A stretch of DNA of 64,000 bases from positions 20,026,001 through 20,090,000 of the forward strand of contig OZ365113.1 in the NCBI GenBank assembly GCA_977030845.1, written 5' to 3'. This DNA comes from Fimbriosthenelais zetlandica. Lineage: Eukaryota. Below, piece after piece: positions 1-63,847 of the stretch. Every line of letters begins with the position of its first letter. The first letter of the stretch is position 1. Under the pieces are notes generated by a model. It did not search any database. It was not told the origin of the DNA and was given only the letters and a program-made list of their open reading frames with translations. The position numbers were made by a program, and so were the translations under genes.

Positions 1-3000
1 AGGAAGTCAATAGGGCAGAAAATCAGCAGTTTGTCCTGGAGGGGTGCCCAGGACATCGCCAGTCTGGTGATAATCTTGCGGAGGCCAAATCTCTAGATGG
101 TGTGGAAAGAAACGACACAAGTGGCTCTATACCAATGGGGGTTGCCCAGTGAACCTGTCAACATATAGGTAATAAGATGACAATGATACTAGCTCAGAAT
201 AATGGTTCTCAATTAAACGATGAACAACTATTAGGATAAGTTATTAACGAGGTCACACTTGGCAGTTGGATCTTTCTTTTAGATCCTTTTGTGATCAATG
301 AACCCAATGAACACCGGGTCCATCTGTGGTAGACTGATTCAAGGAAAATAACTTCAGGCTGATCGAGATTTGAGTTGACAGCTGAAGGGAAGGTGAACCA
401 TCTCAAGTTAAGTGGAATGCCAGAAATGGTTCCACGTCTGTTAGGATTGCCGCCAGGAGGAGCAGGCTTTTGCTTGGGTTTTCAGTTCACACAGCTGGCA
501 ATCTCGAATTGAATGTTGAAATCAACGATCAGCAAGACAACCTATTAAAACCCCACATGTAGGCTTTCATTTATCACCCGACAACCACCTCTGTACAATC
601 AATTGAAGGGAGGTGGCAAACTAATGTATGCATAAAGTTTCTGGACCTTCAGGGCTTTCACTTGAGGATGGGAACCGCTTGAAAAAGAGAAGCCACAGGG
701 TAAGCCATCTGTCAAAAATGGCTTCCCCATTGCCTGTACACTAAATGCCCCGGTGACATAACAGATGGGGGGAGTCCAGCTGGTATAAATATCACCAGCA
801 TGTTCTGTCTTAGAAAACACCGATCCTGATCCATTCTGATCAATTATGTCAGTGAAAAAGGACTACTTGTACTTGGTGATATTTCAGCAATTATAGTTCA
901 CCCCATATCTAATTCACTATCTGATGTGCAGGTACACCTGTGTTCTTGCTTCACCTCTGCCATTTGAATAGATATAGAGCAAGAGTCAGTGTTTAGCCCA
1001 TAGGCCATATGCTCTCAGGGCAGCTCGCTGAGGTGAGCTCAATTTTGCCCTATACAACATGAATGAAGATATAGCTATTTATTGCCGAGTACGATTTCTC
1101 AAACAAAAACACTTCAGACAAATTTCATCCCTTAAAAAGAATGACTAATACGCTGTTTTTGGTAATCATTTCGAACTTGGCACAGGCAGTTTCTAAAGCT
1201 TGTAAACTGTCAAATGCTCAAAAGCAGCTGTAGTTTGGTAAAAGTCAAGACATGTGGGAACCTGCTGTTGTTTGCTTCATCTTGGCTCTCATCTGTGTAC
1301 GCTTTCACCTCCTCTACCTTCCCCTGTACCTCCTCATTCTCTACCTTTTCTTTCTCCTCCCTCTCTCTTTAAATATTTCTAGACTTCCTATCAGGCCATA
1401 CAAACAGGGACTGGCTGACTTCCCCCTTCCAGGCAGCTGCTTCCTACTTGTCAAACTTTACATCAGACTTGTGTCCATAACCTTCACTAACATCCACATA
1501 CCCTGGGGCTGCCTGGGTCAGTGTGTGTATGTAAAGAGTTTTCCAGGGAGGATCCAAAATCCATGAGATAATAGATGTTTATTTTGTTCCTTTTTAAATT
1601 GCAAGTAGCCACAGATTACCCCATGAATGTTTCTTCAAAGTACTTTCGATAACCTTCCTGAATCACGTTTGCCTAAGTGTTTGAGAAGAGAAAATGACGA
1701 AGTACAATGTATAACACTCTAAGGTAATGCTATAGGAGCACATTCACAACTGGAGATTATAAATGATCGTCAAAAACGTTGACATCATAACGACTACCAA
1801 CACAAATCTCGCCGACTCATTTATAGGTTGGGAAAGACAATAACAAGGTCATATCTGGAAACTAAAGAGTTCGGAACCGATATTTTAGGTCATAATGGCA
1901 GCAAAAGTCGGATAAGGAAGTGTAGTGTCAGTTTTGATTGATGACCGTTTCCTTTATGACAGGCAAAAAGGGAGCCTTACAATTAACAAGAGTGCTTCGT
2001 TTTCTTGCAGCCAGCATGCCACCAGTCTCCTCCAAAACCTAGAACATCACAAACATGCATATTTCATAGGAAATATAACATTTAATTGGGTAGCATTGAG
2101 ACAAAATAGTGCAGAAGCTTATATGGAATGGCATTTATGTTGGTCAGTGCGGAAAGTCAAGATGATAACACTGTTTCTAAGGATCGACAGAGACAGATGC
2201 TTGGAATGCTAATTGGAATGAACATAAGATCTGTGTAGTAGAATGCATATCATGAGGGGGATGGATGCCATGAATGATTGACAAAGAGCCCTACATCTAT
2301 ACCCTCATGATGGCCATTATGGAACCAGCAGAGGCCGACCAACCCGGATAAAGGGGTCACGTAAAGAGATCCCTCAGTGTGTACGGGTCATTCACGCCAC
2401 CATGATCATCATCTCTCAGACTACTGCTGTATCTATATCATCTCTCGTCATTGTAAACAAGCCTTGAGAGTCTATATACTTAATGTTGATTTTAATCACA
2501 CTGAATAACATTTTTGAGCGATCGACCAACATCAATGTTTGTGAACTGCAAGCATATATAGGCCTACATGCATTCATCAGGCAATCGGGATATAGCGTTC
2601 AATAGCAACATTGTTGCATCCCAATGAATCAGTTAAGAGGTAATCAAAGATGCATCAATCATTAAATGTGCGTTTTGACTGAAAATCATCTCATGACAGA
2701 TATAGTGTGAAAAGGCCAAATGTTATGCCACTTGGCGTGCAGACTGTCTTTTATGACGCCGCAGCGAATCCCAATCGATGACCGACATGTAAATGGATAC
2801 CGGTTGCCATGACGATTTGAGGCCCTTGAGGAGGCCAGACGATCATTGATAACATGTAACCAAGGGCGATGAGGGAGATTTACATGTTCCCACGTCTTAC
2901 ATGCTAAGAGCAGGGGACAATAAAACAGGCCTGCACTGATTGATCAGTGGCATGTTGGTAACATCAAGATCAGCCAATCAGAGCTGGTGAAATCCCAAAA

Positions 3001-45989: not shown

Positions 45990-48900
45990 CTGCAAGAGGA
46001 AAAACAAATCATTATCAGGAAAACCAGGAAGTTAATGAGATTTTTCAGACAACTTTCATAACCATTATATTAATGTTCCAAATCAGGGTTCCTGTAGTTC
46101 GGAGATGATCAAATTTAAAACTTTTTTAAAATACTTTTTAAGACCAATGATCCTCATTTTTAACACCTAAAATTCGCACTTTCTGACAAAGAATAGTCGG
46201 CAAAATCGCCAGTTAAATCATTGATAACATCGTCAGTAGTATAGTGGACAATGGCGACAAGGCCTTAAATTTTCCCAAAACCAATTTAAGACTTTTTAAT
46301 GCCGCGCGGGAATCCTGCAAATGAGCATCTTTCACAGTAAATGATGTGATGGCTTCTATTCTCACCATTAGATCGCATGTTAGCCCTACCTTCACGCTAC
46401 AGGTAAAACGTTATAAGGAGTTCTAGATGAAAGAAAATTTAATGAATCCACTGGAGTGACCAGTACAGGAGCTCCTGTGTGATTAATTAGGCCTACACTC
46501 ATATTTGCCATCGTCTTCATGGGACCACCTCAAAGCATGTTAGAATGATTAGTGGTGAGAGATAGATTCATTGTCAAAGCCAGCTGCAACGCTTCTTGGA
46601 ACATAGATATTGAACAGCGCTGTTGTGAATTTAACATGAGGCATGTTATAACCGTCGTCTGCCTCTTAACTAATGTCAGCTTCAGGCAGGAACATTCGAT
46701 TACATAATGTGAAGCAGAATAATTTTACATGACAAATTTCACATTCATCTATGAAACAAAACATTAGTAGGCCTACTTAAAACATGTTATGGTCATACGA
46801 TTTTAAAGCGGGTAACCATAGACTGGATTTAAAAACGGGACTAAACATCTCTAATTAATTATTTCTTAATTTATAATTACCTTTATCTCCATGTTGCCTC
46901 TTCGTCGTATTTCATATCCCCCGATGGTATCCAGCACCTTTTTTGTAGAAGAGGACAAGTGGATTTTCATGGGTCTTGAATTGGTTTCCATTCTTGAGGC
47001 AGTATTGACTGCATCGCCAAACAAACAGTATCTTGGCATCTTGTTTCCAACCACGCCAGCGACCACTGAGCCACTGTTTACGCCTATTCTGATACGAAGC
47101 ATCTCCTCTGGTCTATGCTTTACTTTGAAGCTGCCACAGGCCACTGCAATGTCCAGGGACATATTGGCAATGTGCGAGGCATGCATTTTACCGTTTCTTG
47201 TTGGTAACCCTGATATGCACATGTAAGCGTCACCAATAGTTTCAACCTAGAAGAGAAGTAAATCATGAGATCATCAAGTGCTACATGAAAATACAATATT
47301 TAGCTACAATATTTAATAATTATCCAAATCCCTTTCTTTGACATGGTACTATTACATATATCGTTGTATCCTTACAAGCATTAATTTGAACGTACCTTAT
47401 ACACATCATGGGCCTCAATGACAGCATCAAATGTTGTGTATAAATCGTTGAGAAAGTCAACAATTTCCAAAGGTGATGATTCTGCCGCAATGGTAGTGAA
47501 ACCCACAATGTCGGAGAAATAGATAGTCACCGACCCGAACGCTTCTGGACTGACAGACTCTCCACGCGATAAGGAATCTGCAACTGAAGCTGGTAAGATC
47601 TTGTGCAACAACTCTTCAACTTGCTTGAGAGCTGCATTTAATTCGATTGTTCTTTCATTCACTTTGTCCTCCAAGTGATCGACGTATTTTTCTAGTTCTT
47701 CCATCATACAATCAAGTAAACTCTTCCTGTTGGGATTAGCTTGCTTGACCATTTTGATTACTTTTGAAAATTGAGGACGACCGGCAGGTTCAGGAGACCA
47801 GCAAGCAGTTAGGATGGATACCATTCTTTTTGGCATCTCTGATCCCAGCTCTGGCCTGTAGTCACCTTGGTAAATATCTTTAATTATTTTCTTGGGTTCT
47901 TTCTTTGACAGGGCTTCATCAAACGGATGTTTTCTAATGAAAAGTTCTATAACTGCCATAGAAAAACTGTAAACATCAGAATATTTTGTCGGGGGCAGAT
48001 ATCTGTCAGCGAGAATTTCAGGAGCGGTCCAAAACAGGTGGTTTGCAATCATATTTTCGTCGGTGCCTCCGGAATCTACATCAGAAAGTTCTCCAAGTAC
48101 TCCAGACCTGGTGATGATGTCCTGTGATGCGACCAGTTTTGTGTACTGCCAATCACCAACTTTGATTGTCCATCGGGAGTCAATGTAACAAGTGGCAGTA
48201 CTAAGAAAGCCATGGATTACATGATTCTGGTGTAGATAGTCCATGCCCATAGCTATGTCCATTGCCATAGTGTATTTAAAGTTGTCATCCAGATTGAAAC
48301 GCTCGCTATGTATGACGTCCTGCAAGGTGCCTTTCGTGCAATATAGGCTGATCAATTGGGTCTTCTTATCAAAGTCACTTATGCCATAGAAATTCACCAC
48401 ATTCAGATGATTTACTGTATCCCGCATCCACAGAAGCAAGCGCTTCGTACGATGCCTTAGTTCTTTAGGATCTTTGATGATGGTAATGGTTTGTATGTTC
48501 ACTAGTTCCCCATTCCATTGTCCGAACATCAGTGATTCAGGGTGGTCATGGTTTGCCTGCGACTTTCTAGATGATTTTTTTTCGGCCAGACTTCCAGCGC
48601 TCCTTGTGTGTCCTGTTATTGAACTATCAACAGACACAACCGACTTGGCGTTTATATTTTTCATAATGACTATAGAACTTGAAGGAATTATGTACTCTTT
48701 TAGAAGAATGGCTTTGTTTAGTTTCACTTGGTGATACACTATGTAGGCGACGAACAGTAAGAGAAGAAATATAGCAATGGGCAAGGCTATAAATAGTGGC
48801 GTACGCCATGTCTGAGCGGCAAATATTTCCATATATATCTCTTCCTCTACCAATTCCTTAACACTTCTCCCTTTACATGAAAATTCATTCAAAACCTGAT

Positions 48901-50319
48901 CAAAGATCCTAGTTGCGACTGCAGTACTCAGGGGCACCATACCCTTTGCAATGGTGGTATTTCTGGCAGTACTACTAGTCAGAAACCATTCAATGTAGCG
49001 ATAGAGAGCTGTTGCAGATCTACAGTCCTTCATAGTTGTTTTGTAGATAATTAGATAGGTGAAACTAGATATAGGATAACTGCTTCTTCCCGGAGCATCA
49101 ACGATGGAGAGGGTCATTTTCGAGGTGAATCCAGCTGAGAAGGCGTCCATAGCACTCTGTATTGTGGTCACGTTGGCCTCCACCAAGACATCGTCCTTGT
49201 TGAAAATCCTGGCTGATTGTAAACTAAAACTGACCGCATCAGCAGCTGACAGATAGCCGAGGGAGTAACGAATGGACACGAGTAAGCCAGCCATGCCAGT
49301 ATTAGTGTTTCCATAAAAGGAAATGGCATTAGGGTTCCAATGTACAGGTACATAGTTATCCAGTCCAACGCTGAATGATCCGTATGTGGCGTTCCATTCA
49401 GAACTGAAGGCGCTCAACGTACGAGTGAAAACGTCGGTGGTTCCTGACTTGTCAGATCGAGCCAGGACTATGATTTTAGAGTTGGGCAATGTAATGCCTG
49501 GGTTAGCTATGGCTATTTCTGTATCGTTCCACCACGTTATGGTTCCATTGTAGATGCCCACCACATGCTGACGTTTGAGATTTATTTGTGGATTATTCGG
49601 GAGATGGTAGGCAAGAACTACAGCCCTGGAATAGAAATAATTGATGAGTCTGGGTCAGTTGGGATTTATGTTATATAGGCCTAGAAGTATGTCACCTGTC
49701 CAAGCAGGATCTAAACCATCATTTTCCGCAAGGAACAAATCCTATGACTGATCTAACTTGCAAATTAAAGGTAAACATTTAACATCACAACTCACCCAGC
49801 CATGGTTGGAAACATTTGCAGATCTTGGTGAGTCAGATATTCGTTTTCGGAAAGTATTGAATCTGAACCAGCGTATTCCACGGGATCTCCATATCCTTCA
49901 ATTCTGGCTTTGCCTGCACCACTCCCAACAGCGTCATAGATCATATTCAGCGAGATGTCCCTTATCCTCTACAAATAAAACAAACACCCCGAGTTACTGG
50001 AGCTAACCAACATCAAGATTGAAGCGATAGTTGAAGAAGAATATGAAAGTTTCATACATATGCCTATAGAACATAATGGTTCAACTTTATGGTTGTTGCT
50101 AAGAATTAATAGATTTGGGGTTCAACACTGTTCATAAATATTTCTTAATAAAATGATCAAACTGACCTGGTACAGGAGAATCCATTGTTTGTAGACTGCA
50201 GATGGAAACGATGCTCCAGCTCCACGGAGCTGAACAACTTCACTTGCTGCGGCTACCTGGAGTGAGCATTGGGTCACTAAAGCCAGAGCCACACACAGAT
50301 AGAACGTCCACTGCTGCAT
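45840..50319 (-). CDS. Receptor guanylyl cyclase with PstS-type (type II periplasmic phosphate-binding) ectodomain; join(50167-50319,49796-49968,47396-49625,46881-47246,45840-45989), 1023 aa
   Basis: Five exons with GT-AG boundaries and consistent phases (0,2,0,0) sum to 3072 nt = 1023 aa + TAG. Domain order: signal peptide, PstS motifs ([33 protein letters not shown]), one TM helix, kinase-homology domain, coiled coil, cyclase domain ([36 protein letters not shown]). Confidence 0.93.
46881..47246 (-). CDS. PstS-GC exon: guanylyl cyclase catalytic core
   Basis: Acceptor cttctcttctag|GTT, donor AAG|GTAATT, 366 nt. VETIGDAYM...[38 protein letters not shown]; the GTP-specifying Glu (KVE) and Cys (RYC) are present. 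Confidence 0.96.
47396..49625 (-). CDS. PstS-GC large exon (2230 nt): rest of PstS domain, TM helix (~48734-48799), kinase-homology domain, coiled coil, start of cyclase domain
   Basis: Acceptor ttctattccag|G, donor AAG|GTACGT. Matches ORF 47381-49564 extended to AVVLAYHLP. The intron falls at the conserved DVYK|VETIGD position. Confidence 0.95.
49796..49968 (-). CDS. PstS-GC exon ([58 protein letters not shown]); missed by the ORF track
   Basis: Acceptor tttatttgtag|AGG, donor GG|GTGAGT, 173 nt, phase 0 to 2. Contains the PstS Y-x-x-x-GSGAG and (D/E)-(F/Y)-x-x-SD motifs. Confidence 0.92.
50167..50319 (-). CDS. PstS-GC exon: signal peptide and start of PstS domain ([15 protein letters not shown]...[24 protein letters not shown])
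   Basis: Hydrophobic N-terminus followed by LRGAGASFP (cf. E. coli PstS LTGAGATFP). Donor CAG|GTCAGT at 50167; the exon's acceptor is at 50354. Confidence 0.88.
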
Positions 50320-51172: not shown

Positions 51173-52306
51173 TATAGCCTACCTGTGGCTTTCACACAAC
51201 AGGCTAATCAAGTAAGACAAGTTGAAACTACTTAAGTTTTACATGGTAAGAAAGCCTCTTTGGGAAGTGTTAGAAACAGAGAAGACCCAACATGTAGGGC
51301 GAGTGAAAATCATGGAATTTCTATAAAAAAAATTTCAACTACCGACAACCCCAACCCCGCCCCCCGTACCTGACCCTTCCAATAGGCCTACAGGCCGAGT
51401 TGTGAACACTAAAATGTGGATTCGTGACAACACAAATTTTGGTCAAATATAGGCACCAGAAGGCTGAGATGAAGATTTGAAACGCCCTGAAAACCTGCCC
51501 GGCACACAATGATTCAGACTAAAATCAATACAGCACTGAGCGCCAGGTGAACATAATCTATATACGAAAGAATAGGAAGGTCACGATATTCTTTTTATGT
51601 TATCAATTGAAATACATCGTTCCCTTTCAATAATATATCCTTTAAGAACCTCAAATAATGTTTCCAACGTATGGTTGAATTTCAGACAAGTAAGTGAGAC
51701 CTGGCAAAACAATGGATCAAATGAAATGTCAAGGATGGGTGAGGAAAAGGTCTCATACAAAAGTCACCTTTTGTTTCTGAAAATATACCGTACTATAGTT
51801 TCCAGTAACGAGGAAAACTTTGCTCAAAGTTTCTATTGAATCCAAAAGATTAACTAACTGAATGAAAGTGTGAAGACACGGTTTCTTCGGTGAGTTATTA
51901 TTGTTAAAGTCAAGTTAACACATCTGAAAAAGGGTCTTCCATAAAAGAACGATGACAAAAAACTTATTAAATAGACAAACTTCATTGCCGTCATCGTCAT
52001 CGGCCCTCACATAGGAACGAATAAAAGAACGAAGAAGAATTCAAAGAACCGAATGGAAGGGAATTTAATAATAATGTCTCATTAGTCTCAGTCTGTATTG
52101 AAACACTCACAAAGACTTAACTGCATAGGCCTATTTCTAGGAACTAAGACGGATCAATATAGCTGGCTGGTGCATTGAAGTTTTCATGTTAGTTGATAGT
52201 AAGAGAATAGTTAGGGCGAGCATGATAAAACTTGAAAACTGGAATTGAATTACTTTAACTTTATTAGGATATACAAATCTACATCTTACCCTAACTCCAC
52301 TTAACA

Positions 52307-52331
52307 CCCCCCCCCCCCCCCCCCCACCCCC
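52307..52331. repeat. Poly-C tract (C19-A-C5); poly-G on the minus strand
   Basis: Read directly from the sequence. Confidence 0.95.
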
Positions 52332-53570
52332 AAAAAATAATTTGCTTCAAAAAACCCTTTTGAAGCAAAGCTGGCTTCGGGAATCTTTGACAAAATGAAC
52401 AATGAAACTTGCATGGTGAAGTAAAAGAGACCTAAATCCATGATAAGCATGAACACACATGGCAAGAAAATTTCGAAGAGAACGAAGGGTTTGGTAGAAA
52501 CATGATAGTCCCTACAAGTGAATGATACAGTCTCAATAGCACCTCTCCAAGACCATCGTCATGACTACAATAATATGACTATACTGGAGCTCATACCTAT
52601 TTCTGCCTTTATCCCTTTATGAAACCCACATATATTACACTTATAGATAACGGGTTATGAGTTAATGGACAACATCCTGAATGAATAACTCGAGTATAAA
52701 TGAGGATACAATGTATTCCTCTCTTTTCCCACTTATAAGGTTCAGTCTGCCGGGCACTCTGAAAACACTGGTATCTAAAACTAGATGTTGCTAATGACTA
52801 ATGCTTTTTTTCAAAGTTAATACTGTACATTGAGTGAAAAGCAGACGTCTCCCAATAAGAACGGTCATCTTTAACATAAATTTTATATACATATATACAC
52901 ATGCATATATCGTATTTTCCGGAGTATAACTTCTTTAAACCTAGGCGGCCTGCGCATCATAATCAGAGGGGGTTGTGAAAGGGGGTTTCCCCATACATGT
53001 ATAAATATTAAAACTTATAATTATTATATTATTTAAATATGTGGTTTACGTTTCATAAACTGATATGCTGGTTATTCTCAGATGTGCGTTATATTCCGGA
53101 AGATACGATACAGTACCTCAGATATTGTTAGGAGGTCCCAGTAAGATAAGAAACCTAAGGCTAACATGTGAACAAAACTATCACTGTGGAACTACACTAC
53201 AATGATAATATTCTGGATGAATCAAACTTGATCACAGCATATCATGAAATGGACCTAACCTTCTACACACAATACAGGCCATACCAGATATTCCTTCACT
53301 TATATAGCCACCAATTTGACTAAATATAAATGGCCACGAGCTAGTAGAATAAAATGAAATGCAACAACTAGGAATTCAAAGGTACTATACTGTGGCCATC
53401 AAGAATGCTTGAAAAACAACCTGATGGATACCATTCCTAATTATTACATTTATCGGTATATAATTAACTGAGTATGCTCGAGAATGCTACAGATTTATGA
53501 CCAGAAAAAGAAAACCTTCAAACTATCAAACCTTTCAAGTACAAAACTAAAATGACGGGGATATCTGCTA

Positions 53571-53650
53571 CAGTCTGTCCAAACTAAGTTGGACCGAAAC
53601 CACAGTGCATTTCTATGGTGTTTTTGGTCCAATTTAGTTTGGACAGATTG
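53571..53650. mobile_element. 80-bp MITE-like foldback element with ~30-bp terminal inverted repeats and TA flanks (Tc1/mariner-like)
   Basis: The left arm cagtctgtccaaactaagttggaccgaaac matches the reverse complement of 53621-53650 at 26/30 positions. Flanked by TA at 53569-70 and 53651-52, and starts CAG. Confidence 0.7.
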
Positions 53651-53951
53651 TATATTCCGCCATTCTTCTTATAGAAAGCTATCTCTGAATATGTCTACAA
53701 GCATAAAGTGCAACTAGGAAAAATGGAAGACAAAACCTCGGAAATAATCATACGGTAATTTCAATCCGAGGTCCAATCAAGATGGTAAGCGACCGAGAAA
53801 ATCACCTTGTTGAGTGAAGAACGTATACTCAAAATACAAAAAAGGAGCAAATCACAGAGAGGTTACCATTGGAAACGTATGGAATGGTAAAGACCAGAAT
53901 AAACCCCGTTAGATATATTGTGGGGTATATATTTCATAAATCACCCAAGTG

Positions 53952-54065
53952 CTAATTTTTCTTGTTATCAAAATAAGTGAAGACTTGGGCAGCAAAGTCC
54001 TGTGCCCATCTGATCAGTCCTCGTCCAGTGGGGCTGGCGTTAACGTCACGCACTGGCACTCTTGT
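53952..54065 (-). CDS. ACD: ACD-like terminal exon (TRVPVRDVNASPTGRGLIRWAQDFAAQVFTYFDNKKN*), TIN2-binding-motif-like
   Basis: Acceptor cttaattgtag|ACA, phase 0, TAG at 53952-53954. The L-x-x-W-A-x-x-F pattern is shared with the human TPP1 C-terminus. Confidence 0.7.
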   Translation of the reverse strand, partial: TRVPVRDVNASPTGRGLIRWAQDFAAQVFTYFDNKKN

Positions 54066-57000
54066 CTACAATTAAGAGTCGAGGAGAAAAAAAATTAAAT
54101 ATTTTGTTGAATATGTTAGCTATCCTGAATGTGACATGTTCATTCAAAGTACTGGATAGTGTAGTGTATATATTATGATTTTTATCAATAATAACTGTGT
54201 CTGTACATGTGTTGGTGGGGACGGGTATATTATTAGATATCATTTAATTATATCCATGTAATTAAAAAGGTAAGGTAATACCGTATGTCAAGCAAGCATG
54301 CAACACCAAACTCTGACCATCACTAATGACTTCCGCATCATAAGCACATACAATTGCATTGCATACCTGGAGGCAATGAAGCTTTTTTGTTTTTGTAACC
54401 GCAATTACTTGATGCACCGATGATCAATATATCTTGCCAGGATTAATTACATGCATGATGTAGTATAATTTGGGAAGGAAAGTAAACGTTTGGAATCAAC
54501 AAACAAATGGCCAAAAGATGTAAAGCTAATGGACTGGCCACAAAAGAGAGGAGAAAGACAGAGAGGGGACAGAAAAAACACAAGCCAAGCCACCAAAGCA
54601 AGATCTAAGAAAACAGGTATAATCATATGTTAGAATTCCAATCAATGTTATCAAATCAACACAAGGAAACAGACAAAGACAAGGAGGAACAAATTCACAC
54701 ACACCCGCAGAAACAATTAGGGTAAAACAAGAATGTAACGTGTGGGGAAGGAATATATAATACTCAACAAGCACGTTTTGAATACACTTTAAATGTAGAT
54801 TCAACGGAAAAATCAGTACCAACACCTGTAGCAGGAAAGATAACATGTGATACAGAAAGGAAACTTATTAGTAAAATAACTTAAATCTAACTTATTATTA
54901 AGATTAGGGATGAGGTAGGTTGTACTCACCAGCAGTCGTTTACCATCAGCGTCATTATCGATGATTTGTGGCTGGGGTTGGTGGGAGGGTAGTGAGTTGA
55001 CCGGGGTGTCACCTGATGATATTTCACCAATCTCTCTCCCCTCATCCTGCTCCTCCAGGTCTGCTCCAGTGTCTACCACCTCCTCTGATCCATGATTCAC
55101 CAATGTTTCCTGTTCTATTACTTCCACTCTTTCCTGTTGCGGTTCTTTCTCTTCCTGGGTTTCATCTACCTGATCTCTGTCACTTGTTTTCTCCTGTTCA
55201 CTTTCAGTGCTATGGACAGTTTGCTCTGTTTGCTCCTGCTGCTTCCCTTCCTCCACTTGCTTCTCTTCCTGGCACTTCTTCGTGGGAGGTTCAAGGGAAT
55301 TAGATGAAGAGCCACTAGTAGTTGGGGTTTCCCCACTCGATTTTAGAACCAAATCAAGGTCCTGTGATGAAGGAGCCTCTCCCATCTCCTCCACAACACC
55401 TTCGTCCGTCGTTTCAGTGGCCTGAGCTGATGGGCTGGGTTTACAAGTTGTATTTTGATCAGATTGTACAACCTTTTCATCTGGGGAAATCACTTCGGTA
55501 GATATGACTTCAGTTGACTTCGCCACTTCAGTAGAGATGATTTCAATGGACTTCGCCACTTCAGTAGAGATGACTTCTTTTGACTTCTCCGCTTCTGTAG
55601 AGATGATTTCAACTGACCTCGCCAGTTCAGTAGAGATAACTTCAGTTGACTTCGCCACTTCAGTAGAGATAGCTCCATTTGACTTTGCAACTTCAGTAGA
55701 GATCACTTCAGTTGACTTAGCAACGTCAGTCGACATGACTCCAGTTGACTCCGCTACTTCTGCGGATATAACTTCAGTTGACTCCGCTACTTCTGCGGAT
55801 ATAACTTCAGTTGACTTCGCAACTTCGGTAGAGATAACTTCAGTTGACTTCGGCACTTCAGTAGAGATAACTTCAGTTGACTTCGCCACTTCAGTAGAGA
55901 TAACTTCAGTTGACTTGGGCACTTCAGTAGAGATAACTTCAGTTGACTTCGCCACTTCAGTAGAGATAACTTCAGTTGACTTCGCCACTTCAGTAGAGAT
56001 AACTTCAGTTGACTTGGGCACTTCAGTAGAGATAACTTCAATTGACTTGGGCACTTCAGTAGAGATAACTTCAGCTGACTTCGCCACTTCAGTAGAGATA
56101 TCTCCAGATGAGTTCGCCACTTCAGTTGACTTCGCCGCTTCAGTAGAGAAAATATCAGGTGACGTTTCCACTTCAGCTGACTTCGCAGCATCAGTAGAGA
56201 TAACTTCAGTTGACTTCGCCACTTCAGTAGAGATATCTCCAGATGAGTTCGCCACTTCAGTAGGGGTCACCGCCTCCAGGTCCTGTAAAGAGTCTGTACC
56301 TCTGGCCTCACCTTTCCCCGAGCTATCAACCTCGGAATTGAGTGACGATTCCCCTTCAGTTTCTTCCTGTGGTGGAGGTAGGGAATTGTCAGGAGAGGCT
56401 ATCAACTTCCTCCGTGATTTAAGGATAGAGCCGTATGTAGACACCAGTTTATGTGCAGGACTTCTCACTTCATCATCGTCCATCCTCTTCTCCTGACTGG
56501 TTTTCGATGTAGGGCTGAATAAATGGGACATGCCTTCACCTAAAAAGCGTTTTTTCCTATCACTCTCGCGGAAACTGTCATCAAGATCAGGTGGGGCCTC
56601 GGCTAAATCCTCGCCAAGCTTGGCCATCTTGTCGGTATAGAGGCGGCGCTTTTGGCCTCTCGCCCTTTTCTTGCTTGAGGTGAATAGAACGTTGACGTCA
56701 GGCCCATCAGTTTTTTCTTTTACAAGTCCGATTTTCTTTTCTTTCACATCAAGGACCATCATGCTTTCGTTTCGGCTTTTCTTGGCTTTCTTAATTTTGT
56801 TACTTTTCTTTCCTCCCGTCTCGGGTATAAACTCAGGATCTTCCATATCTAAATCACTCTCTGAATCTGTCTTTCTGGCTCCTTTCCTCTTGGCACCTTT
56901 CGCACGTTTACTTTTCTTTCCCATCGCCTCGGAAATGAACTCAGGATCGTCCATATCTAAATCACTATCTGAGTCTATCTTTCTTTCACCTTTCCTCTTG

Positions 57001-60000
57001 GCACTTTTCACAAGTTTATTTTTCTTTCCCATCGCCTCTGGAATAAACTCAGGATCTTCCATAATATCACTATCTGAGTCGGTCTTTCTGGCTCCTTTCC
57101 TCTTGGCACTTTTCACAAGTTTATTTTTCTTTCCCATCGCCTCGGGAATAAACTCAGGATCCTCCATAATATCACTATCTGTGTATATCTTTCTTTCACC
57201 TTTCCTCTTGGTACTTTTCACACGTTTACTTTTCTTTCCCATCGCCTCTGGAATAAATTCAGGATCTTCCATAATATCATTATCTGAGTCTATCTTTCTT
57301 TCACCTTTCCTCTTGGAACCTTTCCCAAGTTTACTTTCCTTTCCCATCGCCTCTGGAATAATGTCAGTATCTTCCATATCTAAATCACTATCTGAGTCTG
57401 TCTTTCTTTCACCTTTCCTCTTGGCACTTTTCACACGTTTACTTTCTTCATCATTATGGACCTTTGTTTTGCTCTTTGCTTTTTTAGACAACTTGCCTTT
57501 CAGCTTTGACTGCGTCTGACTTCTCGCTTCATCGTCAGATACAGTTTCACTCAATCTGCCTTTGCGTTTCTTAGAACGAGATCGGGGAAGTTCTACTATA
57601 TCCTCTTCAAACTCCTTTTCTAAGTCGTCAGAAGTGATTTTCTCCTCTCGAGCACCACTGTCACTCTCACTGTCCTGGTGGTGAGATATTTTATCCGGGA
57701 CAGTATCTTCATCTGTGCTGATTTCAATGAGATCGTATCTCTTTCTCTCTCTTCCCTTATTTCTACTTGATGATCTTATATTTTTCACCTCAGGCGATCT
57801 CTTATGTTCTCTTTTTTTCTGCACATTCATAGAAGATTCAGCACATGTTCTTAATGTCATTCTGTGATGCCAATCTGAATCCTCAGACGTCAACGACTCA
57901 GACAGCCGATCCTGGGAGGAACTTCTCTTAGGTCTTTTTGGGATGATTGAAAATGTTTTTTTCTTGATTTCCAGGCGAGCTTCACTTCGAGTGACTTGCT
58001 TATAACTTTGATCGACATCGAAAACAGGCAACTCCTCTAATGAGGAATCCAGAATGATTGGTACAGGAACCTTTCTAGATCTCTTGCTCCTCCTTGATTT
58101 ACTTGATTTATGGCTACAACCACTTTTGGCATCATCTATTTCGGAATCTAACTCAGAGCCAACATCCTCGCCACTTTCAGACACCATAGGCTGGATGTCA
58201 TCTTCATTCAACAACTGTTCGAATTTCCTTTGCATGCTATGTACACGTTTGGGCTCCACGACAGTGATTCTTTCCAAACATACTTTAGGTGACAAGATGG
58301 TAGAAAGTCCAATGTCTGATGGTGGCAGTTCATCATCAGATGGCTCTGTTTTTATAACAGCAGTCCCATCCTCTTGCTGATCTAAATTCTCTCTGTTACT
58401 TTCCTCTTGATGATGTGTCCTTTTCCGAAAATCAAATAGCAATGCTACGTCCGCGAGGACAACCTTGCAATTTTTGTATATCCGGTATTCTGTGGCAAAT
58501 TTGGACTTTGCGCTTTCCTGGGCAACTTCGGACCTAGTACTTTCCTGGGCAAATTCAGACATAGCGCTTTCCTGGGCAACTTCAGACATAGCGCTTTCCT
58601 GGGCAATTTCAGACAGAGCGCTTTCCTGGACAACTTTGGAGCTAGCACCTTCAAACTCCTGCAGCTCATCGTGAGAACTTTGTTCTGAAGATGACAAAGG
58701 GATTTGACTTGCACTCAAAGATGGCGAGTTAGAGGCACTTTTTACCCTCCGTGGTCTTCCTCTCCCCCGTTTAACTGGCGACTGCTGCCCCGAGTCTGGC
58801 GTCTTCCCACCTGAAGGTTCAGGGGAAGTCAATACCAGGCGATCGGACTCAGAACTATCATAAAGAAGCTGCTGGCTTTTCTTTTTATTGACTCTCAGTT
58901 GAGAAGGAGATAGGGAAGAGTCTAAGTCTTCAAGTTCACAGGCGTCCTCAGTGTTGGTTTTGAATTTGCCAGTGCTCCTCGTCATTGGAGAAGAGAATTT
59001 TACTTTGTCATTCACCACTTTTTCACCAGATTTAGTATCACCACTGCTCGTAATGTTCGAATCGGACACCAACACTAGAGATGAAATATTAGAACCACTT
59101 GACTCCAGATAAGTTATTTCTTGAGCAAGTAACTGTTGATCTGAACTTGTGGCACACACAGATTCTGCCACAATAACCACAGGTTGGTTGAGTGAAGTCG
59201 AGGGGACAATATTGCCTATTTTAGCAGCGTTTTCACTGGAGATTGGAGATGCTTTTCCAGTTTCCCTGGTAAAGGCAGATTTCGTCTTTCGCATTTTCTT
59301 TCCTTTACTAGATAAAGCTTCGGGAGTCGGGGGCAGGTGTGAATCAGATTCAGGAGCCACTTTCTCATTAGAATCTGTTAGTGGAGAAGGGGAATCAAAT
59401 AAGATTTCGGGGGACAAACAGTCTTCTGGAACAACAGTTCTCCGGGAGGGAGTATCATTCTTGGCTTTTCCTTTAAGATTGAGCGCTTTCTGACCACTCA
59501 CTGCAGGAGAGACTGATCTGGTTACCCTTCTTGACAATGATGAAGGTTCAGAGTCACTTGAAATTTCAATTTTTTTTGCTGTGTTGTTCCTCGCTCCAGA
59601 CTGCGGTGTCTTTTGCCTAGAGCGTGGTGTCTTCCCAACTGATGGTTCAGGGGAAGCCATTCCCAGAATATCTGAATCTGAACTATTATGAAGACTTGAA
59701 TTCGCAGATGGTGAGGTGGAGGCACGGTTTACCTTCCGTGGTCTCCCTCTTCCCCGTTTGACTGGCGACTGCTGCCCCGATTCTGGTGTCTTCCCACCTG
59801 AATTTTCTGAGAGATTGGTTCCCAGGGGTTCTGAATTTGAACTAATATACATTTGGAGACTTTTCATTCTATTGACTCTCAATTGAGCAGGCGATAGGGA
59901 AGATTCTAATACTTCAGGTCCACAGGCATCCTCTTCAGAAGTCGCTGCGTTTTTTCCCATTGTTCTAGTGCTCCTGGTCACATGAGAAGAGAATTTGGGT

Positions 60001-63000
60001 CTGACAGTTACAGCGAGTTCATTCTGGTTTTGATTAGAGTCACTATTAGACTCTGATGATTTTTCTTTTTGCTCATCAGATTGCCGCGAGAGGACGACAA
60101 TTTCATCTGCGTCCATTAGAGGCGTTGGGAATCTTGGGCGATTAGTAACTCTCTCCTCAGCCCTTCTCTTTTCAATATCGCTAACAGGTCTTGAAGGACT
60201 ATGGACGACAGCTTGCACTGTGAACCTGCAACTTTCACTCATATCGTTTTGATTACTAACAGTTTGTTGAGAACTTGGGAGGACGGGAGAGAGCTGGACA
60301 TCTGGACGTGGCACAGCCTGAGAAGCCTCATCAATTTGTGTTGAATGGTATTGCGTGTGCGGAACTAGTGCTTGGTCTATTGTCGAGCCATCTTCACTTG
60401 GGGATTTTCTTTGTGATCGAGGAGTCTTTGGGACTAATGGACTAATTTTACTGCCTTTTTTGGATTGGGCACTGTCTTTGAGAATGTCTTTGAGTTTGTA
60501 ACTCGGCTTTGGTCTGCGTGGAGATCTTCGTGGACTCTCATCTCCTGATAGTTCAACAGATCGTATATGTTTAGCAATACTGGATTTAGAGAGGCTAGAC
60601 CTAGAATCACTATTTGGTTGACTTTTCTGAATTTTCTCACATGTATCCCTTTGTACACGTTTGTCCTTCAAGGACGATTTAGAAGACGGTGTGACACTTG
60701 CTGATGAACCCCCAGAGAATTGGTGCATGATAATCTTTCGATTTATCATTGATGCCGGTGCTTTCTGTGCCTCTGTTGTTGGAGAATGAATGTCTGTAGA
60801 TTCCTTTGAGCCATCTGCCTGTTTAGATGCCCCATTGGTGAAAACCCGACTTTGTGTATTGTCCACAAATGAAGTAACATCACAAACACTTAAGTCCACT
60901 TCTTCCAAACACTCCCCGACATCCTTGATTAAATTAGGCACAGATATATCAAGAGCATCAGGTACTTTCCTCACCTCAGAGCTGGGGTTCTCTGAGTTAG
61001 AAGTGCTCTTCTTGCGACCGGGTTTCTCAGTCAGTGCCTTCGTTTTAGATTTAGGTTTCACAGGCGTATTTCTCCGAGAACTATCACCCGAGGCACCAGG
61101 GCCATCACCAGAGAGGGTGACTTGATGAGTGGATGATGTGTCACTGTCTGTACTAGGAATTCTTTGACCTTGCGTCGAACCTATACTGTCATCATCTGTT
61201 TTGCCACTAGTGACACTTATCTCACCACTTTGCTGTCTCTCAGAAACGGGCACCACTTTAGTTGCTGTCTTCACAGCACCACTCGTGGTAGCCTGCTCTG
61301 GCTGGGGCTGTATACTTTCTGGGCTGGCGGATTTATTATTAGATTTCTCTCTCGTAGAGACATCCTTGGCTGAAGAAAGGGTGGCAGAAGGATCCAGCGA
61401 CGATTCCTGTGATTCCTGTGGTGGACGGTAGTCAGCTTTCCATCCTAGAAATTGACAAAGAGCAAATAAGCCAAAATGTCACTCAACGAAAGATTTTATT
61501 ACAATTTAAAAAAAAATCATTCAGAACGAGAGTAGATGACAGACTTACTAAACTGGGTGTAATTTGTATTGCTTCGATTTGGGGATTGTCTTTAATAATA
61601 TTATATAAAAGTTATATTTAAACTTACTCTCAATGCTTTCTAGAATCTCGTAGTCGGCTCTAGGAATGGCAAATTTCTGTAAGGACTTGTCTAATGCGCT
61701 CACTCTCTGACAACCAGGTAGATCTTTCAAGGATAAACGATGCATGGAGACTTTTTTGGTAAATATACCACCATGTACTAAAGTCGTATTACCTCCTGAA
61801 ATACAAACGTGGATTGTTTTAAAAACATAAAATTAAAACATAAAATTAAATTGATCATCTCATATACACATATACTTGCATGTACAGGTTTCTATTTTTA
61901 CATTAACTCCTTCATGGAAATTCGTGAGGTTCGAACCAAATGTTTTTTATTTCACTTTTGTGTTGATAAATGAAATAAATAAATAAATATTGAAATACCT
62001 TTGTCAGGCCCACTTATTAATAATAAATATTGAAATACCTTTGTCAGGCCCGGTTGTATTGCGTTCCACGGTCTCTCTTCTTGAGTCTGTAGCATTGCTT
62101 TTTGCTCTCTTCTCAGCATTCTTCTCAGTAGATTTATCATTCTCAGGTCCCCTGACACTGCTTTCTGCAGTCATCTCATTCTCCGAGTCTGTAGCATTGC
62201 TGTCTGACGATTTCTTCTTGTCCGAGTCTTCATCTGAGGGACAATTAATGCGCTGTACCAGTTGAGTCAGTTGTGTGGAGTTTAAGGAGTCATCAACTTG
62301 GGAGGCAGATATCTGACTTGCTTCAGTTGAGCCTAAAGTACTCGTGCTTTTACTTCTTGCCGCCAGTCTGAAATGTCACACAAACAATGATTAAATCAAA
62401 TCAATGTTCAGGTACTTTTTCACACAAGTTCCGAAGGACATTTATAATGTAATATAATGTATTTTGAGACTGCCTACTCTAATTTCACAGTCCATGAACT
62501 CATTCTTACCTCCAATTCATCCAAAGTTGAGCTGACTTTCGCTGAACATCGGGCATTTCCATGCTACAAATGAAAAGAAATCAATTGAATTCAATAATAA
62601 GGGAGAGGAGTAGCATAATCTCGTAGAAAATTATGGTCAGACTAAAAATAACCTTTTATCAATTTCGTTTGAATTTGTGGTAATGCGAAGAATTTGAAGA
62701 AGCCTTCTCAGACATATCACAAAGTTAAATACATCGTTTTTAATTTACATAGTCCTCCTTAAGCAGCTAATATTTACTCACCAGTATTTCAGGCTCGACT
62801 TCATTCGACACCCCGTGTAGTTGCCCCATGTCTTGAACCCATTCACCACTAACTCAAAGAAGCAGTCGTTCTGTGGGAATAAATTCAGGAAACTGTCAGG
62901 AATGTGCTATCACTAAGAAAGGTAAAATGGTAAACAACAGAAGTGAAATAATACGAGCAAATTCTTATAATAAACAATATACAAAATTATTTGCATACAC

Positions 63001-63847
63001 CATACATGGTATATGCAGGAAACCTATTACATGTAGTCCCAAAAGTATATTTATTTACCTTATTCAAGGATGGACGATGCTCAAGACGATAATCGGTAAG
63101 TATCACTAGGGAGCGGTCCCACTCTACATGTTCTTGGGATTGCCTGTGTGGGAAAAAAGATTTAATCAAAATATCGACATCCATCGAGTTTTTAGTTAGT
63201 GCCTGGTATATAGCACAAAATGCTCTCATGCTTTATATCACGGGACAGTGATTTATAAAATTAATTATGGCGTTGAAAAATGGTTGACTCACGTGTCTAT
63301 ATTGGATAGGACACGAGTAATGGCCGGGCCAGAGAACCTGGCGCGAATAATGACTTCACCGTCACTGCCGTCTTTAATGAACCCTCCATCCTCACACGGT
63401 CCACTCACTCCCTATAAAAAACAAACACGTATTTGTTATTGCATTAACGGCTAAGGCATAGCAATAACTTTCACTGATTATGTTTCTTCAGCAAAATATA
63501 CAGTATTAATTAGCACTTTTGCATTACCTTTGGCAACATGTTTCATGTTTTTCTTTCATGACTTAGTCACTAAATATATAAATCTGAGAATTTTAAGTGA
63601 TGTACCCAAGCTTAACCAAATATCTATATACACAGCACATCGACCATGAAAACCTAAACTATAGACAAAGAGATTGCTTTAGATTTTGTTTCATAATTTT
63701 ATGAAAACCTACCCGAATGAGATGAAGCAGCTTTCCAGGGGGTGGCTTTTCTGAGCCCAGTACAAATTGAAGGAGCCAGGGACGCAGTCTAAATATAGAC
63801 TTACTGGGTATCGTCTCAGGCTGCTGGAATGTATTTTGCCGATCCAT
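53952..63847 (-). CDS. ACD: Giant TPP1/ACD-like shelterin protein; join(63713-63847,63293-63411,63059-63143,62782-62870,62510-62563,62039-62367,54930-61444,53952-54065), 2479 aa
   Basis: Eight GT-AG exons with consistent phases (0,2,0,2,2,1,0) sum to 7440 nt. The first ~160 aa align by eye with the human TPP1 OB fold: LRPW, LGSE, GxLL, SDGxxxxR, LxxLxD, FxLxVxxF, CxxxxDVQxK. The last exon has LIRWAQDF, cf. human TPP1 C-terminal LMAWALHF. Confidence 0.8.
54930..61444 (-). CDS. ACD: ACD-like exon 7: 6515-nt giant exon encoding a ~2170-aa low-complexity S/E/K-rich region
   Basis: Acceptor gtcaatttctag|GA, donor CTG|GTGAGT. Stop-free throughout (ORF 54813-61274 extended upstream to the acceptor). 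Confidence 0.88.
55490..56260 (-). repeat. Coding minisatellite, 33-nt unit, ~22 copies of EVAKSTEVIST
   Basis: The plus-strand unit gtagagataacttcagttgacttcgccacttca is visible directly; 18 consecutive 11-aa units plus degenerate flanking copies. Confidence 0.95.
56790..57445 (-). repeat. Coding tandem repeat, 105-108-nt unit, 6 copies (KxVKSAKRKGERKxDSDSD(L)xMEDPEFIPEAMGK)
   Basis: Seen in the translation and in DNA (e.g. atcgcctc at 57136 and 57241). Confidence 0.93.
58500..58635 (-). repeat. Coding tandem repeat, 27-nt unit, ~5 copies of QESAMSEVA
   Basis: gcgctttcctgggcaacttcagacata-like units are visible on the plus strand. Confidence 0.9.
58735..60000 (-). repeat. Internal duplication of a ~95-aa module ending in an AT-hook (copies ~59720-60000 and ~58735-59000)
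   Basis: KFSSxxTRST...EDAC...SSLSPxQLRVN...SGGKTPxSGQQSPVKRGRGRPR occurs twice. Confidence 0.9.
61982..62051. repeat. 30-bp direct repeat (period 40) duplicating the exon 6 splice donor
   Basis: aataaatattgaaatacctttgtcaggccc at 61982-62011 and 62022-62051. Confidence 0.9.
62039..62367 (-). CDS. ACD: ACD-like exon 6 (Ser/Asp-rich linker, LAARSKST...TTGPDK)
   Basis: Acceptor acatttcag|A, donor AAAG|GTATTT; open in the frame fixed by exon 5. Confidence 0.8.
62510..62563 (-). CDS. ACD: ACD-like exon 5 (CMEMPDVQRKSAQLWMNWR)
   Basis: 54-nt symmetric phase-2 exon, tttcatttgtag|C...GAG|GTAAGA. DVQRK resembles human DVQKK. Confidence 0.82.
62782..62870 (-). CDS. ACD: ACD-like exon 4 (NDCFFELVVNGFKTWGNYTGCRMKSSLKY)
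   Basis: Acceptor ttattcccacag|AAC, donor TG|GTGAGT. FELVVNGF resembles human FYLQVDRF. Confidence 0.82.
63059..63143 (-). CDS. ACD: ACD-like exon 3 (QSQEHVEWDRSLVILTDYRLEHRPSLNK)
   Basis: Acceptor tttttcccacacag|G, donor AAG|GTAAAT; phases fit both neighbours. Confidence 0.82.
63293..63411 (-). CDS. ACD: ACD-like exon 2 (GVSGPCEDGGFIKDGSDGEVIIRARFSGPAITRVLSNIDT)
   Basis: Acceptor tttttatag|GGA, donor AC|GTGAGT. Contains the SDG motif of TPP1/Est3 OB folds. Confidence 0.82.
63713..63847 (-). CDS. ACD: ACD-like exon 1 (MDRQNTF...FRLRPWLLQFVLGSEKPPPGKLLHLIR)
   Basis: ATG in good context (ACAATGG). An acceptor ttttctcag at 63858 implies an upstream exon outside the window. Donor CGG|GTAGGT. 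Confidence 0.82.

What the first reader, a model, noticed from the sequence alone, without database searches (positions are those of the whole stretch)
53952..63847. A ~2480-aa giant TPP1/ACD shelterin subunit hidden behind six small exons
Seen: the anonymous 2153-aa ORF is only exon 7 of a gene. Its six upstream exons assemble into a TPP1-like OB fold (LRPWLLQFVLGSE...SDGEVIIR...FELVVNGF...DVQRK), and its last exon encodes LIRWAQDF. Known: human TPP1 is about 460-540 aa: OB fold (telomerase-recruiting TEL patch), POT1-binding region, S/T-rich linker and C-terminal TIN2-binding motif ending LMAWALHF. Inference: both functional ends are conserved while the linker has grown to more than 2000 disordered residues, about five times the human protein length. 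That would put a very long, decorated tether between the TIN2/TRF double-strand arm and the POT1/telomerase arm of shelterin.
Basis: partly seen in the sequence, partly recalled or inferred. Interest (0 to 1): 0.78.

Follow-up and report, generated by a model that had tools for sequence, protein, structure and literature searches.

The report
Probable giant TPP1 telomere-protein gene
An eight-exon gene here encodes a 2479-residue protein whose two short ends resemble the telomere protein TPP1 (ACD) and whose middle is about 2300 residues of repeat-rich, apparently unfolded chain, some three times the longest TPP1 linker in the one published survey I read; the TPP1 identity is likely but not proven.

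Summary
The 2153-aa minus-strand ORF is the seventh of eight exons. These join through seven canonical GT..AG introns with matching phases into one 7440-nt reading frame of 2479 aa (ATG 63847, TAG 53952-53954).

The TPP1/ACD reading is likely (about 0.7) but rests on short matches.
- Exon 1 alone, searched against all PDB sequences, hits only human TPP1, at the very start of its OB domain. The E-value is only 0.4.
- The last exon is predicted to be a helix carrying an L-x-x-W-A-x-x-F motif like the human TIN2-binding motif.
- The gene is single copy. The genome has TTAGGG telomeres, a POT1 exon and a TIN2 exon.

Against it:
- Pfam TPP1 finds no exon here.
- Four further OB blocks score only z=2.1 over shuffles.
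- No POT1-binding region was recognised.
- No homologue was found in the protein libraries.
- No sequencing run was listed, so splicing is untested.

The spliced OB domain has no reference and could not be folded or profiled. The middle has no known domain, is rich in S/E/K/T/D, and grew partly by in-frame repeats. A published survey gives TPP1 linkers of 50-700 aa. I class it as a new variant of a known kind, of moderate interest.

The parts
63713..63847 (-). Exon 1: start codon in AACAATGG context, 45 codons, carries the NOB-like motif (63749-63787)
   Evidence: In-frame stop 12 codons upstream. No coding exon seen in the 1.5 kb further upstream. The only PDB hits are human TPP1. Single copy in the genome.
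63293..63411 (-). Exon 2 (aa 46-85), contains SDGEVIIR
   Evidence: Acceptor ttttatag|, donor AC|gtgagt, phase 2. No TPP1 hit when searched alone.
63059..63143 (-). Exon 3 (aa 85-113), contains RSLVILTD
   Evidence: Alone it gives no TPP1 hit.
62782..62870 (-). Exon 4 (aa 114-143), contains FELVVNGF
   Evidence: Alone it gives no PDB hit.
62510..62563 (-). Exon 5 (aa 143-161), contains DVQRK
   Evidence: Too short to search alone.
62039..62367 (-). Exon 6 (aa 161-271), serine- and acid-rich; start of the low-complexity middle
   Evidence: No Pfam or PDB match of note.
54930..61444 (-). Exon 7, 6515 nt (aa 271-2442): the giant low-complexity exon
   Evidence: Open for 2171 codons. No real Pfam or PDB domain. 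Unique in the genome apart from low-complexity matches to its 11-aa repeat region. No homologue in the protein library.
59694..60020 (-). Copy A of a roughly 110-aa internal duplication (aa 746-854), ending in an AT-hook KRGRGRPRK (59733-59759)
   Evidence: Copy A against copy B: 58% identity, E=3e-29. dN/dS 0.67. RGRGRPR found twice.
58707..59024 (-). Copy B of the duplication (aa 1078-1183), ending in an AT-hook KRGRGRPRR (58746-58772)
58506..58634 (-). 9-aa repeats (AQESAMSEV type), about 5 copies
   Evidence: 27-bp period, 4.7 copies, 88% matches. Protein coordinates.
56787..57422 (-). 35-aa repeats, 6 copies (basic KRKGERK followed by acidic DSDIMEDPEFIPEAMGKK)
   Evidence: 105-bp period, 6.1 copies, 87% matches. 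Units listed. Pooled pN/pS 0.57.
55488..56258 (-). 11-aa repeats (STEVAKSTEVI type), about 23 copies
   Evidence: 33-bp period, 23.3 copies, 82% matches. Protein view.
53952..54065 (-). Exon 8: 37 codons plus TAG; predicted C-terminal helix carrying LIRWAQDF (53994-54017), the candidate TIN2-binding motif
   Evidence: Acceptor ttaattgtag|, phase 0. AlphaFold2 gives a helix over residues 15-36, with pLDDT about 91 over residues 21-30. The 8-mer scores p about 0.001 against shuffles.

Best explanation
This is the single-copy TPP1/ACD gene of an invertebrate with TTAGGG telomeres, possibly a lophotrochozoan. It has eight coding exons and encodes 2479 aa.

Inferred working, by analogy with mammalian shelterin:
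- Exons 1-5 (about 160 aa) form the OB domain that meets telomerase.
- The helix in the last exon docks on the TRFH domain of TIN2, and through it on the duplex-bound TRF protein.
- A POT1-binding stretch, not yet recognised, lies just after the OB domain.
- The two arms are joined by about 2300 residues of unfolded chain rich in S, E, K, T and D, almost all from one 6.5-kb exon.

That exon grew at least in part by in-frame tandem repeats (11 aa x about 23, 35 aa x 6, 9 aa x about 5) and by a 110-aa duplication that carries an AT-hook in each copy.

What is shown: the exon structure, the open frame, the repeats, the motifs, the predicted C-terminal helix, and the presence of partner genes. What is inferred: the OB fold, every binding step, telomere localisation, and translation of the whole exon.
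For: - Gene model: canonical sites and matching phases throughout. Exon 7 must be read for exon 8 to be in frame.
- Exon 1: all 7 PDB hits at E<=10 are human TPP1/ACD, aligned LRPWLLQFVLGSE to LRPWIRELILGSE at the first residues of the OB construct.
- Five-block collinear comparison with human OB blocks, with spacing kept: score 88 against a shuffle mean of 20.9, 0 of 3000 shuffles reach it. Blocks 2-5 alone give z=2.1, with 100 of 3000 shuffles reaching it.
- C-terminal exon: predicted helix. LIRWAQDF against human LMAWALHF gives p about 0.001. Human L524 and W527 contact TIN2 (PMC8262337).
- Architecture: order-promoting residues are about 0.34-0.35 in aa 1-200 and 0.30 in the last 79, against 0.15-0.26 (0.33 in one block, aa 1001-1100) in between. 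The first 300 aa of exon 7 fold to mean pLDDT 47 with three short helices.
- Context: one copy only. About 8000 (TTAGGG)5 matches against 0 for the control, with an array at a contig end. A POT1 exon has E=1e-3 to human POT1 OB1. A TIN2 exon matches Pfam TINF2_N at E=2.8e-6.
- A TPP1 linker of variable length with no conserved sequence is the known pattern (PMC8653790).
Against: - The exon 1 E-value is 0.4, which is not significant on its own. A clearly unrelated hit at E=0.16 appeared in a similar search.
- Pfam PF10341 finds nothing in the window in the six-frame search or exon by exon.
- Exons 2, 3, 4, 6 and 8 give no TPP1 hit alone.
- The human blocks used were recalled from memory and chosen after seeing the match. 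Their numbering was cross-checked only against residues named.
- No POT1-binding region was recognised.
- No homologue of exon 1 or exon 7 was found in any protein library, so there is no evidence of conservation.
- There is no RNA evidence. Exon 7 could hold internal introns.
Confidence: 0.7

Rival explanations
1. It is a TPP1 gene, but the giant protein is not the main product. Exon 7 holds internal introns or alternative acceptors, so the usual protein has a much shorter linker. The 2479-aa form would then be rare or never made.
For: No transcript data could be had. TPP1 linkers in the published survey are 50-700 aa. Constraint within the repeats is only mild: pN/pS 0.57 and dN/dS 0.67.
Against: The frame stays open for 2171 codons and must be carried through to reach the motif in exon 8. 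All repeat periods are multiples of three. A sequence that was always spliced out would have no reason to stay open.
Confidence: 0.2
2. It is not TPP1. It is a large low-complexity nuclear or chromatin protein (AT-hooks, basic and acidic repeats) whose ends resemble TPP1 by chance, or whose N-terminal domain has another fold.
For: All similarity lies in short motifs with weak statistics. Pfam TPP1 is silent. No POT1-binding region was found. Two AT-hooks suggest general DNA binding.
Against: The only PDB family hit by exon 1 is TPP1, at the matching position in both proteins. The second motif sits at the extreme C-terminus in a predicted helix, as in TPP1. No other family matches any part. The genome needs a TPP1, since POT1 and TIN2 are present, and no other candidate was seen: the only weak hit elsewhere is AT-rich non-coding DNA.
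Confidence: 0.15
3. It descends from TPP1 but has taken on another role. The OB domain and the C-terminal helix remain, while the expanded middle with its AT-hooks and charged repeats gives a different main function, such as general chromatin tethering.
For: The middle is three times longer than any linker in the survey. It carries conserved duplicated modules with AT-hooks.
Against: It is the only TPP1 candidate in a genome that keeps TTAGGG telomeres, POT1 and TIN2, so the shelterin role is still needed from it.
Confidence: 0.1

Closest known systems
Human TPP1/ACD (PDB 2I46 OB domain; 5XYF with TIN2; 5UN7 with POT1)
   Same: N-terminal motif LRPW..(I/V)LGSE at the start of the OB domain. 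Weak collinear blocks with similar spacing. Serine-rich unfolded middle. C-terminal helix with L-x-x-W-A-x-x-F.
   Different: 2479 aa against 544 (458 for the short isoform). No recognisable POT1-binding domain. Two AT-hooks and three tandem repeat arrays in the linker. Pfam PF10341 does not detect the exons.
Invertebrate TPP1 orthologues surveyed by Myler et al. 2021 (PMC8653790)
   Same: Architecture of OB domain, variable unconserved linker and C-terminal end. A vertebrate-like helical TIN2-binding motif was reported there for two starfish.
   Different: Linkers there range from 50 to 700 aa; here the linker is about 2300 aa. The survey found the helical TIN2-binding motif absent from most invertebrates, whereas here a candidate is present. 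The organism here is unknown. One weak hint points to molluscs.
Fission yeast Tpz1 and ciliate TEBP-beta (TPP1 relatives; from general knowledge)
   Same: N-terminal OB domain, and a bridging role between the single-strand binder and the duplex-bound complex.
   Different: Not compared here. Both are of ordinary size and lack the C-terminal TIN2-type motif.

Membership tests
TPP1/ACD (shelterin subunit) | N-terminal OB fold of Pfam family PF10341 | tested here: inconclusive
   The six-frame search of the whole genome with PF10341 gives no hit in the window. Exon-wise Pfam is empty. Each exon is only 17-45 aa, and the spliced 160-aa domain has no reference, so it could not be profiled or folded.
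TPP1/ACD (shelterin subunit) | N-terminal OB (NOB) motif at the first residues of the OB domain | tested here: met
   Exon 1 against PDB: all 7 hits are human TPP1, aligned at chain residues 6-29 of the OB construct, with 9 of 13 identical in the core. The E-value is only 0.4.
TPP1/ACD (shelterin subunit) | TEL patch residues for telomerase binding | not testable with these tools
   According to PMC8653790 these residues are not conserved outside mammals, so their absence or presence would say nothing here.
TPP1/ACD (shelterin subunit) | POT1-binding (RD/PBD) helices just after the OB fold | tested here: inconclusive
   Exon 6 and aa 420-520 give no TPP1 hit in PDB. A single-sequence fold of aa 272-571 shows three short low-confidence helices. 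The survey says this region is poorly conserved in invertebrates.
TPP1/ACD (shelterin subunit) | Unfolded S/T/P-rich linker of variable length between the POT1 and TIN2 sites | tested here: met
   S 15.5%, E 9.7%, K 9.2%, T 6.9%, D 6.9%. Low share of order-promoting residues. No domain found. Mean pLDDT 47. The length is far outside the reported 50-700 aa.
TPP1/ACD (shelterin subunit) | C-terminal helical TIN2-binding motif | tested here: met
   Predicted helix over the last 22 residues. L and W are spaced as human L524 and W527, which contact TIN2. The 8-mer gives p about 0.001 and the 14-mer p about 0.04-0.05. Binding itself was not tested.
TPP1/ACD (shelterin subunit) | Partners and substrate present in the same genome (POT1, TIN2, TTAGGG telomeres) | tested here: met
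   POT1 exon at C19:21218825-21218983. TIN2 exon at C19:34671617-34671811. TTAGGG arrays.
TPP1/ACD (shelterin subunit) | Telomere localisation and physical binding to TIN2, POT1 and telomerase | not testable with these tools
   This needs experiments. The partner domains are split over several exons, so no complex prediction could be set up by reference.

The most novel reading that the evidence does not exclude
The shelterin bridge protein of this animal is made as one polypeptide of about 270 kDa. Its tether between the TIN2 end and the POT1/telomerase end is about 2300 unfolded residues long and carries its own DNA-binding AT-hooks and charged repeat arrays. TPP1 would then act here as a long, decorated scaffold rather than a short linker. 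In addition, a vertebrate-type TIN2-binding helix would exist outside deuterostomes, if the organism is a lophotrochozoan.
Probability: 0.45. Interest if true: 0.6.

Novelty: new variant of a known kind. Interest (0 to 1): 0.5.

Why it matters
TPP1 joins the double-strand and single-strand arms of shelterin and brings in telomerase. How far its linker allows the two arms to separate is an open structural question. A natural TPP1 with a linker three times the longest one surveyed, bearing AT-hooks and repeat arrays, would be a ready-made test of whether linker length and content matter for end protection and telomerase recruitment. A candidate TIN2-binding helix in an invertebrate outside the two starfish would also widen the known range of that interface. 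If it turns out to be an ordinary low-complexity protein, or a minor isoform, the finding is of little consequence.

Tried and rejected
- The search for homologous proteins with whole exon 7 and with its first 500 aa: nothing.
- Full HMMER scan of 1.84 billion representatives with exon 1: 0 hits. No orthologue could therefore be fetched to stand in for the spliced protein.
- ESM Atlas with exon 1: no usable hit.
- Pfam on each exon and on exon 7: nothing real. The ScsC_N hit in exon 7 is below the family cut-off, with no single stretch passing on its own, and I take it as spurious.
- PDB sequence search with exons 2, 3, 4, 6, 7 and 8 and with aa 420-520: no TPP1 hit.
- PF10341 over the whole genome: one weak hit on contig C1, which is AT-rich non-coding DNA with stops. 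It was rejected as a second TPP1. The search also missed the candidate itself, so it says little about absence.
- Search for a retrocopy that would give an intron-free reference: only the gene itself.
- Sequencing runs: none was listed, so read laying could not be used.
- Passing a PDB chain code to protein comparison: not accepted.
- SUMO-interaction motifs in exon 7: not enriched, 2 seen against 2.1 expected. Idea dropped.
- Complex prediction of the C-terminal helix with TIN2: not run. The TIN2 TRFH domain is split over at least three exons, so no sound chain could be given by reference.
Full report
**Observation.** The window holds a 2153-aa ORF on the minus strand at 54813-61274. I set the exon borders by reading the three minus-strand frames and the bases at each candidate junction.

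The eight exons are 63847-63713, 63411-63293, 63143-63059, 62870-62782, 62563-62510, 62367-62039, 61444-54930 and 54065-53952. They are separated by introns of 301, 149, 188, 218, 142, 594 and 864 nt. Each intron starts with GT and ends with a pyrimidine tract plus AG. The codon phases match at every junction. The joined sequence is 7440 nt, or 2479 codons plus TAG.

The ATG at 63847 has A at -3 and G at +4 and follows an in-frame stop. No further coding exon shows in the 1.5 kb upstream.

Exon 6 ends in phase 1 and exon 8 begins in phase 0. Exon 8 is therefore read in the frame that gives LIRWAQDF only if exon 7 is read through. Exon 7 has no stop in 2171 codons, while a shifted frame has 247. 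No sequencing run was listed for this DNA, so splicing and expression stay untested.

**The middle of the protein.** Exon 7 encodes aa 271-2442. The whole protein is S 15.5%, E 9.7%, K 9.2%, T 6.9% and D 6.9%. Order-promoting residues make up about 0.34-0.35 of the first 200 aa and 0.30 of the last 79. In the 100-aa blocks in between the share is 0.15-0.26, apart from 0.33 at aa 1001-1100. Pfam and the PDB sequence search find no real domain. A single-sequence AlphaFold2 model of aa 272-571 has mean pLDDT 47 and three short helices. A model made without an alignment is a weak guide to disorder.

Part of the length comes from internal amplification:
- a 33-bp array of 23 copies (11-aa units)
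- a 105-bp array of 6 copies (35-aa units)
- a 27-bp array of about 5 copies
- a 110-aa duplication (aa 746-854 and 1078-1183, 58% identity, E=3e-29), each copy ending in an AT-hook RGRGRPR

The extra copies add up to roughly 565 aa by my count, about a quarter of the middle. Copies differ more at synonymous than at non-synonymous sites (pN/pS 0.57, dN/dS 0.67). That fits mild constraint on a translated sequence. Outside the 11-aa repeats, exon 7 has no other copy in the genome.

**Is it TPP1?** The spliced N-terminal domain exists only as a string built in a script.

Exon 1 (45 aa) against all PDB sequences gave seven hits at E<=10. All are human TPP1/ACD or fusion constructs containing it. 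They align LRPWLLQFVLGSE..P...G.LL to the first residues of the crystallised OB domain. The best E-value is 0.38. That is not significant by itself: a 101-aa piece of exon 7 gave an obviously unrelated hit at E=0.16. The weight comes from which family was hit and where. TPP1 chains are about 7 of 177,635 sequences, and the match sits at the N-terminal edge of the domain in both proteins.

The other exons gave no TPP1 hit alone. Pfam PF10341 found nothing exon by exon or in a six-frame scan of the genome. For comparison, the same kinds of search did find single exons of POT1 (E=1e-3 to human POT1) and TIN2 (Pfam E=2.8e-6). The TPP1-like domain here is therefore more diverged than those two.

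**A rough check on the other blocks.** I scored five short blocks of the human OB domain against residues 1-165, requiring the human order and spacing within 15 residues. I recalled these blocks from memory. Their numbering agrees with the TEL-patch, PBD and TBM residues named in PMC8653790 and PMC8262337.

The chain score is 88, against 20.9 +/- 9.2 for shuffles, and none of 3000 shuffles reached it. The first block gives 51 of those points. Blocks 2-5 alone reach z=2.1, with 100 of 3000 shuffles as good. The blocks were chosen after seeing the match, so this is supportive only.

**The C-terminus.** At the other end, LIRWAQDF against the human LMAWALHF scores p about 0.001 against shuffles. 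The wider 14-mer scores p about 0.04-0.05. Exon 8 is predicted as a helix over its last 22 residues, with pLDDT about 91 over residues 21-30. Human L524 and W527, which contact the TIN2 TRFH domain, have counterparts at the same spacing.

Myler et al. report a helical, vertebrate-like TIN2-binding motif in only two starfish among the invertebrates they examined.

**Context.**
- The gene is single copy.
- The genome (447 Mb, 79 contigs) has about 8000 exact (TTAGGG)5 matches against none for the control, including an array at the start of contig C1 in the telomeric orientation.
- POT1 and TIN2 exons are present.
- The one weak PF10341 hit elsewhere is AT-rich non-coding DNA.

A TPP1 is expected in such a genome, and this is the only candidate seen. 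However, the scan that failed to find another also failed to find this one.

The organism is unknown. The neighbouring receptor gene's nearest Atlas cluster is commonest in molluscs, which is only a hint.

**Verdict on identity.** Taken together, the evidence is the family and position of the exon 1 match, the weak collinear blocks, the C-terminal helix motif, the layout of a folded end, a long unfolded middle and a short helix, and the genomic context. On this I put about 0.7 on a TPP1 orthologue whose coding sequence includes the giant exon.

The open points are:
- The fold of the N-terminal domain could not be tested.
- No POT1-binding region was recognised.
- No orthologue was found that would show conservation.
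- There is no transcript evidence.

**Mechanism (inferred).** As in mammals, the C-terminal helix would hold the protein on TIN2 and so on duplex-bound TRF. A stretch after the OB fold would hold POT1 on the single-stranded overhang. The OB fold would meet telomerase.

The tether between the TIN2 end and the OB/POT1 end would be about 2300 residues. It carries two AT-hooks, a run of six basic-acidic 35-aa units and about 23 acidic 11-aa units. These could add DNA or protein contacts of their own. None of this has been tested.

**Comparison and novelty.** The published metazoan survey gives TPP1 linkers of 50-700 aa and calls the linker the least conserved part. A linker of about 2300 aa is a large extension of a known trend, not a new kind of system. 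I class it as a new variant of a known kind, with moderate interest, limited by the weak homology statistics and the lack of RNA data.

Noticed in passing
G000:C19:21218825-21218983 (L010:1501-1659, minus strand): A POT1 OB1-like exon (E=1e-3 to human POT1) lies only about 1.13 Mb from the TPP1 candidate on the same contig. A TIN2-like gene is also on C19, at 34.67 Mb. This may be chance.
   Followed up: partly
L009:590-922, 1486-1746 and 1939-2097 (plus strand; G000:C19:34670117-34673311): A likely TIN2 gene. One exon matches Pfam TINF2_N positions 82-145 at E=2.8e-6. An upstream ORF looks to my eye like the first half of a TRFH domain but gets no Pfam hit. The domain is split over at least three exons.
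   Followed up: partly
window 55488-56258 (minus strand): About 23 tandem 11-residue units of the STEVAKSTEVI type. An 11-residue period is typical of amphipathic helices that bind surfaces (general knowledge). Weak low-complexity matches exist on other contigs.
   Followed up: no
window 55504-56496 and 56671-57519 (plus strand): Long antisense ORFs of 330 and 282 aa lie inside the repeat arrays of exon 7. They are most likely a by-product of repeats that lack stop codons on the other strand.
   Followed up: no
window 52069-53951 (minus strand): The first AATAAA or ATTAAA signals after the stop codon are 1.7-1.9 kb downstream. The 3' UTR is therefore either long or uses another signal.
   Followed up: no
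window 47384-49564 (minus strand): A 727-aa open exon of the neighbouring receptor guanylyl cyclase. Its nearest ESM Atlas cluster combines a phosphate-binding-protein-like domain with a kinase-like domain and is commonest in molluscs. This is the subject of other notes of the scan.
   Followed up: no
G000:C1:82-898: A long CCCTAA/TTAGGG array at the very start of contig C1. There are about 8000 exact (TTAGGG)5 matches genome-wide and none for the control pattern, so the telomeres are canonical.
   Followed up: partly
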